A stretch of DNA of 63,646 nt, filler included, from Octopus bimaculoides (lineage: Eukaryota): the NCBI RefSeq assembly GCF_001194135.2. It is 3 parts of 3 records of this genome, joined end to end, with 100 filler letters (N's around TTAATTAATTAA, not from the genome) between each part and the next. Parts side by side here need not be neighbours in the genome. Positions count along the whole stretch, not along the records: positions 39,294 to 63,646 come from NC_068990.1; 2 more parts are not named here. One strand, 5' to 3'. The position numbers and the translations under genes are program-made. The notes under the pieces are model-generated. The model searched no databases. It had not been told where the DNA came from and saw only the letters and a program-made list of their open reading frames with translations. Of this stretch, positions 58,971 through 59,918 are shown one piece after another (within the stretch, counting starts at the first letter, position 1; every line of letters begins with the position of its first letter).

Positions 58971-58996
58971 ATTGGTGTAGCAATTGTATGTAAAGT

Positions 58997-59012
58997 GGCC
59001 CTGAAAAGGGCC
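58997..59012 (-). other. Canonical histone-mRNA 3' stem-loop motif (orphan)
   Basis: Minus strand AAAAAAA-GGCCCT-TTTC-AGGGCC-ACTTT: 6-bp stem, UUUC loop, A-rich 5' flank and AC 3' flank as in the SLBP-binding consensus. Sequence match only; function unknown. Confidence 0.75.
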
Positions 59013-59248
59013 TTTTTTTCGTTTACACCGAAAGCAACGGAACTGCTGTTGCTGTGAAATGTAAAACTCTGCGAAAACAGATGACAAACTTATGTCTGGC
59101 AAAGGAAAAGAAGCATGGTTAAGGAAAGTTACTAACTTTCAAAGCATGACTACAGTAGCACTCACTACCCATTAGGTCTGCGAGGTTGTACTGGTGTAGT
59201 GGAGGCACCGAGGCTCACGAATTTGAAAGCAGTTGGCGCAGGATGTGC

Positions 59249-59443
59249 CTACAACACCTCTCTGTAGACCAAAGTCTTTCGTTTTGTCATTATGGGCAAA
59301 TACGAATATATTTTGTTTGCTTTCAACTCTGGAGCATCCGATATAAAACTGGCCAAGAGAGAAACATGGCTCACCCTCCTTCTTTGGGCAGCCGAGGCAG
59401 CCTCTGTTATACGACCAAAGCGCATTTTTTTCTTAGGTGGCAT
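59249..59443 (-). mobile_element. Internally deleted Helitron RepHel remnant
   Basis: CCACC-ATG then MPPKKKMRFGRITEAASAAQRRR, joined out of frame to EPCFSLGQFYIGCSRVESKQNIFVFAHNDKTK/LVYREVL* (59372-59249). The latter matches the Pif1-like helicase motif VI and terminus of Helitrons (CFSHGQLYV.CSRV...KTKN.VY.EVL*). Element ends not defined. Confidence 0.85.
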
Positions 59444-59918
59444 GGTGGTTGTATTGGGCTATGTTTAAATTGTGCGTTTAAAAAACGGGCAAAAAGGGAA
59501 GCTAAAAAACAAATTTGGTATGACGTATAAGAAGTGAGGTGGATGCAGGGACAGACAGTTAGCTATGTGTGCGGACACAAAGATACATAATACAATATTT
59601 TTTAACGAGACTTACGCTAAATACTGGTAAAGGGCAATAATGTAAAGGGGTTAACTTGAGTATGGGGACAACGAAATATTTCACACAGAAAGTATGAAGC
59701 TAAACCAATAATGTACGTTAAATGGTAGACCTAACATTTAAGCTTTTGGAGAATATAAAGTAGGTCATGACCATTGAGGCAACCTCGCATTTATTTATTA
59801 GACGACTGTTTCAGGCTCTGAACCAATAACACTCTTATAGTATAATACAGAATGTGCCTTAAGAATGTAAAAATATTAAACAAATCTATATAAGCCTATA
59901 GGCTGACTCACGACCTAA

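What the first reader, a model, noticed from the sequence alone, without database searches (positions are those of the whole stretch)
58990..59460. Orphan histone stem-loop in sense orientation behind a Helitron remnant
Seen: on the minus strand a Kozak-like ATG, a basic N-terminus and a Helitron helicase C-terminus (stop at 59249) are followed about 237 nt later by AAAAAAA-GGCCCT-UUUC-AGGGCC-AC. No recognisable histone ORF precedes it. Established: this 6-bp stem with a 4-nt loop is the SLBP/3'hExo-binding end of replication-dependent histone mRNAs and is essentially confined to them; U7-dependent cleavage also needs a purine-rich HDE, which I do not see here (SINE debris starts about 25 nt downstream). 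Helitrons capture host fragments and have a GC-rich 3' hairpin about 10-12 nt before CTRR; here CTAC lies 17-20 nt downstream. Inference: there are three possibilities. The Helitron may have captured a histone 3' end (there is a faint likeness of TTCGGTGTAAAC to the H4 end TTCGGTGGTTAA just upstream). Its terminal hairpin may be a histone stem-loop mimic that could give transposon RNA S-phase-coupled, poly(A)-independent stability and translation, which would suit a rolling-circle element. Or the adjacency may be coincidental. The mimic possibility would be new to me.
Basis: partly seen in the sequence, partly recalled or inferred. Interest (0 to 1): 0.82.

Follow-up and report, generated by a model that had tools for sequence, protein, structure and literature searches.

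The report
Orphan histone-type hairpin beside dead Helitron
A perfect copy of the RNA hairpin that normally ends histone messages sits, with no histone gene, just downstream of a broken rolling-circle transposon (Helitron) remnant. It is most likely a stray or captured piece of host DNA, not a new transposon trick, but the test that would settle this could not be run here.

Summary
On the minus strand, GGCCCT-TTTC-AGGGCC (59012-58997), with an A7 5' flank and an AC 3' flank, matches Rfam Histone3 at 32.8 bits (E 4e-8; the curated cut-off is 34). Genuine histone-cluster stem-loops scored 28.2-39.9 bits in my control. The match lies 236 nt after the stop codon of a genuine Helitron/PIF1-type helicase C-terminus (59372-59249, one frameshift; HMMER E down to 1e-24).

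There is no histone ORF anywhere in the piece. The suggested H4 likeness is not supported, and no metazoan-type HDE core follows the stem-loop.

The closest Helitron relatives I could fetch (pseudoscorpion, prawn, one unidentified run) end in a different, canonical way: a CCCGGG-type hairpin, 6-8 nt, then CTAG|T. None carries a histone stem-loop. In the window the spacing is 16 nt and the end is CTAC|A.

The decisive test was impossible: no other copy of this element could be retrieved, because the source genome is absent from every collection I could query.

Best reading (about 0.4): a host-derived histone 3'-end hairpin joined to a dead Helitron, probably by Helitron 3'-end read-through or fragment capture, and now inert. 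The stem-loop-mimic idea remains possible (about 0.15) but has no positive support.

Side finding: in metagenomes, canonical histone stem-loops follow non-histone ORFs (F-box, MADF).

The parts
58997..59012 (-). Histone-type stem-loop GGCCCT/TTTC/AGGGCC (6-bp stem, 4-nt loop)
   Evidence: Read directly. Single match to the consensus, 0 of 100 shuffles. Folds as the expected hairpin, -11.4 kcal/mol, z -3.8. The identical 16-mer is listed among the stem-loops of annotated human histone transcripts (PMC7807067).
58971..59017 (-). Full-length match to Rfam RF00032 Histone3 (stem-loop plus flanks)
   Evidence: 32.8 bits against a gathering score of 34, E 4.1e-8, model positions 1-46. Real histone-gene stem-loops score 28.2-39.9 bits.
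59013..59019 (-). A7 run forming the A-rich 5' flank of the stem-loop
   Evidence: Read directly. On the + strand it reads as a T7 run after the hairpin, which looks like a terminator.
58977..58980 (-). CTAC, the only candidate Helitron end tetranucleotide after the hairpin (16-nt spacer, followed by A)
   Evidence: Read directly. It does not fit CTRR|T. CTAC-3' was seen once as a de novo end of a Helraiser read-through insertion (PMC4778049).
59013..59248 (-). 236-nt spacer between the helicase stop and the stem-loop (putative Helitron 3' UTR, origin not established)
   Evidence: No histone similarity. Weak, scoring-dependent similarity of the part 126-196 nt after the stop to the 3' UTR of a prawn Helitron (z 0.9-5.5). 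No canonical hairpin plus CTRR|T inside it.
59249..59372 (-). Helitron (Rep/Hel) helicase C-terminal remnant in two frames with one frameshift near 59276; stop codon TAG at 59251-59249
   Evidence: phmmer against 1.84 billion representatives: 8 hits at E<=1e-3, best 1.4e-24, all Helitron/PIF1-type C-termini. The tail ...TLVYREVL* parallels ...KNIVYPKALQ*.
59252..59443 (-). 64-aa ATG ORF (MPPKKK...VYREVL); only its last ~12 residues are in the true helicase frame
   Evidence: the ORF listing. No homologue found. The N-terminal part is not significantly similar to a Helitron N-terminus or to the helicase.
58833..58966 (-). 5'-truncated SINE-like fragment that starts 30 nt after the stem
   Evidence: Read directly. 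Its identity as the 3' half of an abundant octopod SINE rests on my memory and was not confirmed by any tool. No second copy is present in the piece.
58650..58828 (-). Second SINE-like copy (tRNA-like head GGCTGTGT...), running into a TA microsatellite and an assembly gap (N 58142-58649)
   Evidence: Read directly. Identity is from memory. ARAGORN finds no tRNA.

Best explanation
The hairpin is a genuine histone-type 3' stem-loop sequence by descent: a short piece of host histone-gene 3' end, not a Helitron invention. It became joined to the 3' side of a degenerate Helitron copy and is now inert.

The most likely route (inferred) is Helitron capture. Either the rolling-circle transposase missed the element's own terminator and ran on until a stable hairpin followed by a CT-rich tetranucleotide (here stem-loop, 16 nt, CTAC) stopped it. 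Or a short host fragment was copied in as filler.

Shown: the helicase remnant, the canonical stem-loop, their order, strand and spacing, and the absence of a histone ORF.

Inferred: the host origin, the capture mechanism, and the lack of present function (frameshifted ORF, no histone coding sequence, no recognisable U7-binding element, a SINE inserted 30 nt downstream).
For: - The exact 16-nt stem-loop plus A-rich/AC flanks cannot be chance. It scores like real histone stem-loops. The same 16-mer is used by real histone genes (25 histone-linked sites).
- It lies in sense orientation 236 nt after a verified Helitron helicase stop. Relatives' terminal hairpins lie about 220-530 nt after their stops.
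- The relatives' own hairpins are unrelated CCCGGG-type palindromes 6-8 nt before CTAG|T. A histone stem-loop is therefore not a trait of this helicase clade.
- The window has no canonical hairpin plus CTRR|T anywhere downstream of the ORF. That is the situation in which Helraiser bypasses its end and transduces flanking DNA. One such experimental read-through ended in CTAC-3' (PMC4778049).
- Octopus genomes, the likely source (identified from memory), carry recently expanded Helitrons (PMC13282606).
Against: - No histone coding or 3'-UTR sequence accompanies the hairpin. The captured piece would be only about 25-40 nt, or the donor Helitron must have sat between a histone stop codon and its stem-loop.
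- No internal original Helitron terminus is visible upstream of the stem-loop.
- The true 3' boundary of the Helitron copy is unknown, because a SINE-like insertion starts 30 nt after the stem.
- Only one locus was seen. Capture and mere adjacency give the same picture at a single locus.
Confidence: 0.4

Rival explanations
1. Coincidental adjacency. An orphan histone 3'-end fragment, left by rearrangement of a histone cluster ('orphon' debris), happens to lie next to a 3'-truncated Helitron remnant. The two never moved together.
For: - The genome region is a patchwork of repeats, gaps and microsatellites.
- The Helitron 3' boundary cannot be placed, and the CTAC|A end is not canonical.
- Similarity of the spacer to a Helitron 3' UTR is weak and stops at least 40 nt before the stem-loop.
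Against: - An intact 16-nt stem-loop with no trace of the ORF that should lie 20-105 nt upstream (distances) needs a breakpoint in a very small interval.
- No histone sequence is found anywhere in the 24 kb.
- Same strand, and a position where a Helitron terminal hairpin is expected.
Confidence: 0.2
2. Family hairpin or mimic. The stem-loop is the fixed 3'-terminal hairpin of a non-autonomous Helitron family. As DNA it terminates rolling-circle transposition. As RNA it could bind SLBP and give transposon transcripts a histone-like, S-phase-coupled 3' end.
For: - It is the only strong hairpin downstream of the ORF, at a typical distance from the stop.
- All sequence determinants I know for SLBP binding are present: A-rich 5' flank, G at stem position 2, U at loop positions 1 and 3, AC 3' flank (established knowledge).
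- Non-histone ORF families followed by canonical stem-loops do exist in environmental eukaryotes, so co-option of the signal is not unprecedented.
Against: - Relatives' ends are canonical and unrelated.
- The 16-nt spacing and CTAC|A violate the hairpin, 6-12 nt, CTRR|T rule.
- No HDE-like core (AAAGAG/AGAAAG type) lies within 35 nt, so U7-dependent cleavage is not expected.
- None of 120 metagenomic stem-loop loci carries a Helitron helicase.
- No second copy was found.
Confidence: 0.15
3. Pure chance. A GC-rich hairpin arose by mutation and only resembles the histone stem-loop.
For: A 16-mer can arise by chance somewhere in a multi-gigabase genome if all consensus variants are allowed. On the + strand the same bases read as a generic hairpin plus T-run. 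That form is common as a bacterial terminator and probably explains many of the histone-less metagenome hits.
Against: Zero of 100 shuffles match even with one mismatch allowed. My calculation gives about 5e-7 expected per piece for the exact 16-mer, before requiring the A-rich and AC flanks.
Confidence: 0.05

Closest known systems
3' stem-loop of replication-dependent histone mRNAs (Rfam RF00032; SLBP/3'hExo site)
   Same: Identical 16-nt stem-loop (GGCCCTTTTCAGGGCC, also used by human histone genes, PMC7807067). A-rich 5' flank and AC 3' flank. Rfam score within the range of real histone-gene stem-loops.
   Different: No histone ORF within 24 kb. No recognisable HDE core. The 3' flank is ACTTT rather than ACCCA/ACCA. 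The nearest upstream stop codon belongs to a Helitron helicase and is 236 nt away, against 20-105 nt in most histone genes.
Helitron 3'-terminal hairpin, and 3'-end bypass with transduction (Helraiser, PMC4778049)
   Same: A stable short hairpin downstream of the Rep/Hel stop, on the transposon's sense strand, followed by a CT-starting tetranucleotide. A de novo CTAC-3' end is documented for a read-through event.
   Different: The canonical spacing is 6-12 nt and the end is CTRR followed by T. Here it is 16 nt and CTAC followed by A. Relatives use CCCGGG-type palindromes.
Helitron gene-fragment capture (maize and bat Helitrons)
   Same: A host-derived fragment sits inside or next to a non-autonomous, internally degenerate Helitron.
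   Different: The fragment would be unusually short (hairpin only), and capture is not demonstrated because only one copy is available.
Histone orphons or pseudogene debris
   Same: A histone-gene-derived sequence found away from a histone cluster.
   Different: Orphons normally keep the coding region. Here only the 3' hairpin remains.

Membership tests
Histone mRNA 3' end (RF00032 Histone3) | 6-bp stem GGYYYU/ARRRCC with 4-nt loop UYUN | tested here: met
   GGCCCU-UUUC-AGGGCC, 16 of 16 positions.
Histone mRNA 3' end (RF00032 Histone3) | A-rich 5' flank and AC immediately 3' of the stem (SLBP determinants) | tested here: met
   AAAAAAA upstream and AC downstream.
Histone mRNA 3' end (RF00032 Histone3) | Reaches Rfam's curated gathering score | tested here: not met
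   32.8 bits against 34. However, 5 of 10 stem-loops behind real histone genes in contigs L013 and L042 also fall below 34.
Histone mRNA 3' end (RF00032 Histone3) | Lies a few tens of nucleotides after a histone stop codon | tested here: not met
   tblastn with H1-H4 over 39294-63646 gives nothing below E 0.3. No nucleotide similarity to 25 real histone 3' ends.
Histone mRNA 3' end (RF00032 Histone3) | Purine-rich HDE complementary to U7 snRNA about 10-20 nt downstream | tested here: inconclusive
   No AAAGAG/AGAAAG-type core in +1 to +35. A simple purine-density measure does not separate real sites from this one (6 against a median of 7). The U7 sequence of the source species is unknown.
Histone mRNA 3' end (RF00032 Histone3) | Transcript cleaved 4-5 nt after the stem; SLBP binding | not testable with these tools
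   No expression or binding data are available.
Canonical Helitron | Rep/Hel protein (SF1B PIF1-like helicase) | tested here: met
   Only the last ~41 residues of the helicase survive, with one frameshift.
Canonical Helitron | HUH Rep nuclease domain and the rest of the helicase | not tested
   No full-length Rep/Hel query was available. No long ORF exists upstream. The Pfam scan of the remnant found nothing.
Canonical Helitron | 3' palindrome about 6-12 nt before a CTRR end, inserted before a T | tested here: not met
   Stem-loop, 16 nt, CTAC, then A. No perfect hairpin plus CTRR|T on the minus strand between 55000 and 59260 or between 58700 and 60200. Relatives meet the rule.
Canonical Helitron | 5' TC end after a host A | tested here: inconclusive
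   The 5' boundary could not be located from one copy.
Canonical Helitron | Multiple copies sharing the termini | not testable with these tools
   The source genome is not in any searchable collection. There is no second copy in the piece.

The most novel reading that the evidence does not exclude
The histone stem-loop is the fixed terminal hairpin of a multi-copy, non-autonomous Helitron family in this (probably octopod) genome. It would serve as the DNA terminator of rolling-circle transposition and, in RNA, as an SLBP-binding, poly(A)-independent 3' end that couples transposon expression to S phase.
Probability: 0.1. Interest if true: 0.8.

Novelty: new member of a known kind. Interest (0 to 1): 0.38.

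Why it matters
If the stem-loop is only a captured or adjacent host fragment, this is one more small example of Helitron-associated genome shuffling and of little consequence.

If it were a fixed part of a Helitron family, it would be the first transposon known to carry the histone mRNA 3'-end signal. That would tie a replication-dependent DNA transposon to S-phase RNA metabolism.

The side observation may matter more. Canonical histone stem-loops follow F-box, MADF and other non-histone ORF families in environmental eukaryotes. This suggests that the signal is used beyond histone genes in some lineages.

Tried and rejected
**Attempts to fetch other copies of the element**
- Word-indexed protein searches with the 64-aa ORF, with a frameshift-corrected C-terminus, and with a six-frame concatenate of 58940-59620 gave no hits.
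- Exact-ORF look-ups of three window ORFs found nothing on record. The source genome is therefore not indexed.
- A family-specific DNA pattern in metagenome contigs gave 0 hits.
- Self-BLAST of 58900-60000 against the piece found no second copy.
- The only text supplement of the octopus repeat paper is a short document (docx, 6,437 characters), which I did not open or search.

**Histone capture**
- tblastn with H1-H4 and nucleotide alignment to 25 real histone 3' ends were both negative. The H4 hint is rejected.

**N-terminus**
- Similarity of MPPKKK... to the N-terminus of an internally deleted pseudoscorpion Helitron (P0003) looked suggestive by eye but is not significant.

**3' UTR homology to the prawn Helitron L127**
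- The result depends on the scoring scheme (z 0.9 to 5.5), so I treat it as inconclusive.

**Other checks**
- A + strand reading as a hairpin plus T7 terminator or Pol III stop: no Rfam family on either strand and no tRNA. Rejected as a eukaryotic function.
- A purine-density test for the HDE was not discriminating.
- Literature searches for a histone stem-loop together with Helitron or transposable elements found nothing relevant.

Full report
**What is there**

Read on the minus strand, the region has this order:
- a Kozak-like ATG at 59443 opening a 64-aa ORF;
- a stop codon TAG at 59251-59249;
- 236 nt of spacer;
- seven A's (59019-59013);
- the hairpin GGCCCT/TTTC/AGGGCC (59012-58997);
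- AC, a further 14 nt, then CTAC (58980-58977) followed by A;
- from about 58966, sequence I recognise from memory as the 3' half of an abundant octopod SINE;
- a second SINE-like copy (58828 downward) that runs into a TA microsatellite and an assembly gap (N 58142-58649).

**Is the hairpin a histone stem-loop, and is it more than chance?**

It folds as the expected 6-bp/4-nt hairpin (-11.4 kcal/mol, z -3.8). It matches Rfam Histone3 over the whole model at 32.8 bits, E 4.1e-8. That is 1.2 bits under the curated cut-off, which is why the gathering-threshold scan listed nothing.

As a yardstick I scanned metagenomic contigs that carry complete histone clusters. In contig L013, the stem-loops behind H4, H3, H1, H2B and H2A score 37.0, 31.9, 28.2, 34.7 and 28.7 bits. 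So 32.8 bits is an ordinary score for a real one.

The consensus, with one mismatch allowed, occurs once in the window and in none of 100 shuffles. From the base composition, I calculate about 5e-7 occurrences of the exact 16-mer per piece. The same 16-mer is among the stem-loops of annotated human histone transcripts (PMC7807067).

**Is the upstream ORF a Helitron?**

The 64-aa ORF as such has no homologues. However, the neighbouring frame (window:59175-59432:-) contains EPCFSLGQFYIGCSRVESKQNIFVFAHNDKTK. In an exhaustive HMMER search this hits eight proteins (E 1.4e-24 to 9.5e-4). All of them carry the Helitron/PIF1-type helicase C-terminus ...EQPCFSHGQLYVACSRVGSPKNLFVFA..GKTKNIVYPKALQ*.

After one frameshift near 59276, the window continues ...TLVYREVL*. 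The stop at 59249 is therefore the native Rep/Hel stop. Only about 41 residues of helicase are left.

The basic MPPKKK... part resembles, by eye, the N-terminus of an internally deleted pseudoscorpion Helitron (P0003). The similarity is not significant, and neither is a reading of it as decayed helicase.

**Is there any histone gene or histone-derived flank?**

No. tblastn with H1, H2A, H2B, H3 and H4 over the whole 24-kb piece gives nothing better than E 0.3. The 245 nt upstream of the stem-loop show no nucleotide similarity to 25 real histone 3' ends, H4 included.

Downstream there is no AAAGAG/AGAAAG-type HDE core within 35 nt. A simple purine-density measure does not separate real sites from this one, and the species' U7 is unknown. 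The absence of an HDE is therefore likely but not proven.

**Does the hairpin belong to the Helitron family?**

This is the decisive question, and I could not answer it directly. Several routes failed:
- Three protein searches, one of them a six-frame concatenate of the whole element, found nothing.
- Three exact-ORF look-ups found nothing.
- A family-specific DNA pattern found nothing in metagenomes.
- The piece holds no second copy.

The source genome is evidently not in the collections at hand.

As a substitute I fetched the genomic loci of the nearest helicase relatives:
- Cordylochernes scorpioides GCA_030710605 (L004, L005);
- Macrobrachium nipponense GCA_015104395 (L127);
- one sequencing-run contig (L001);
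- two further short contigs.

The organisms were identified through.

The 3' ends of these relatives are canonical:
- CCCGGGCGAAGCCGGG, 8 nt, CTAG|T;
- ACCCGTAGGGCGGGT, 6 nt, CTAG|T.

They lie 240-530 nt after the stop. None has a histone-type stem-loop.

The window has no perfect hairpin plus CTRR|T on the minus strand in 55000-59260 or 58700-60200. It has only the stem-loop, a 16-nt spacer and CTAC|A, which does not meet the Helitron rule.

Part of the spacer (126-196 nt after the stop) aligns weakly to the prawn Helitron's 3' UTR. Significance depends on the scoring scheme (z 0.9-5.5), so I leave this open.

**Mechanism**

In Helraiser, the palindrome 11 nt before the end acts as the transposition terminator. 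When it is missing or missed, the transposase reads through and stops at a surrogate site, carrying the flanking DNA along. One such experimental read-through ended in CTAC-3' (PMC4778049).

The picture in the window fits that route or a filler-type capture of a short host fragment:
- a helicase remnant;
- no canonical terminus;
- then a very stable host-type hairpin followed by CTAC.

I therefore favour a host-derived histone hairpin attached to a dead Helitron (confidence about 0.4). It is inert today because the ORF is frameshifted, there is no histone coding sequence and no recognisable HDE, and a SINE-like insertion lies 30 nt downstream.

The rivals are:
- plain adjacency of an orphan histone fragment (0.2);
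- a family-wide hairpin or mimic (0.15);
- chance (0.05).

All of them make different predictions for the multi-copy alignment, which remains to be done.

**A correction to the background claim**

Only 25 sites have a histone ORF within 700 nt upstream.

Some of the others are probably bacterial terminators read on the other strand. But 49 contigs without histone genes have low ORF density.

Several multi-copy families have a non-histone ORF ending 10-106 nt before the stem-loop:
- F-box proteins (PF12937/PF00646);
- a MADF protein (PF10545);
- three families without a Pfam match.

Their stem-loops score above Rfam's cut-off (40.4, 39.6, 40.2, 36.8 and 36.2 bits). Some are followed by a CCCAAAAGAG-type element. 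None of the 120 loci carries a Helitron helicase.

So the signal is not strictly confined to histone genes. This keeps the mimic idea alive in principle, but gives it no specific support.

**Verdict**

This is a real and unusual single-locus feature. The most economical explanation is ordinary: Helitron-associated host-fragment debris. The novel reading is neither supported nor excluded. Interest 0.38.

Noticed in passing
Metagenome loci L056, L011, L043, L074 (F-box ORFs); L098 (MADF ORF); L046, L059, L089, L120, L123; L029, L039, L088; L026, L054, L090; L060, L062, L087, L110: Non-histone ORFs end 10-106 nt upstream of a canonical histone stem-loop. These include F-box (PF12937) and MADF (PF10545) proteins and several multi-copy families with no Pfam match. 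Five of these stem-loops score above Rfam's cut-off (36.2-40.4 bits), and some are followed by a CCCAAAAGAG-type element. This suggests that histone-type 3' ends are used by non-histone genes in some uncultured eukaryotes.
   Followed up: partly
Metagenome loci L016, L036, L075, L078, L103, L044, L092 and about 25 others (termite-gut-like contig names): A large repeat family has the stem-loop embedded in conserved flanks (...CTTCTCCACA-stem-loop-ACTTTTCCTCTTTGTCTTACTAGTTCAT). In L092 it lies about 45 nt after a 355-aa coiled-coil, Lys-rich ORF with no Pfam hit. Some contigs carry 2-3 tandem copies of the stem-loop segment, 106-600 nt apart. In L044 a LINE reverse-transcriptase ORF lies next to it.
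   Followed up: partly
L004 5000-6600, L005 17500-19600 (Cordylochernes scorpioides); L127 6150-7630 (Macrobrachium nipponense): The Helitron helicase C-terminal fragment is amplified as tandem arrays (period about 490 bp in the pseudoscorpion). In L004 the array begins with an ATG and a basic N-terminal exon fused directly to the helicase tail. This looks like Helitron-derived satellite-like repeats that were annotated as genes.
   Followed up: partly
window 59908-59975: An inverted repeat of about 70 nt (minus strand: cgacttacgacc...ggtcgtaagtcg; 74% self-complementary in BLAST), about 470 nt upstream of the ATG. Its nature is unknown. It could be a MITE or the end of another element.
   Followed up: no
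window 59130-59225 (minus strand): An imperfect palindrome of about 95 nt (GCTTTCAAATTCG...CATGCTTTGAAAGT) lies directly after the helicase stop. It has no counterpart in the prawn Helitron 3' UTR in alignment A1. The fold of the whole spacer is not significant (z -1.65).
   Followed up: partly
L013 (metagenome contig ERZ791852 NODE-3126, 7.7 kb): A complete histone quintet (H4, H3, H1, H2B, H2A), each gene with its stem-loop, is linked to a 5S rRNA gene (106 bits).
   Followed up: no
window 39294-63646: The piece is about 32.5% G+C and has six N gaps (10-508 nt), very abundant TA/CA/ATT microsatellites, and no ORF with a homologue. From memory, the two SINE-like copies next to the finding point to an octopod cephalopod. 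No tool confirmed the organism.
   Followed up: partly
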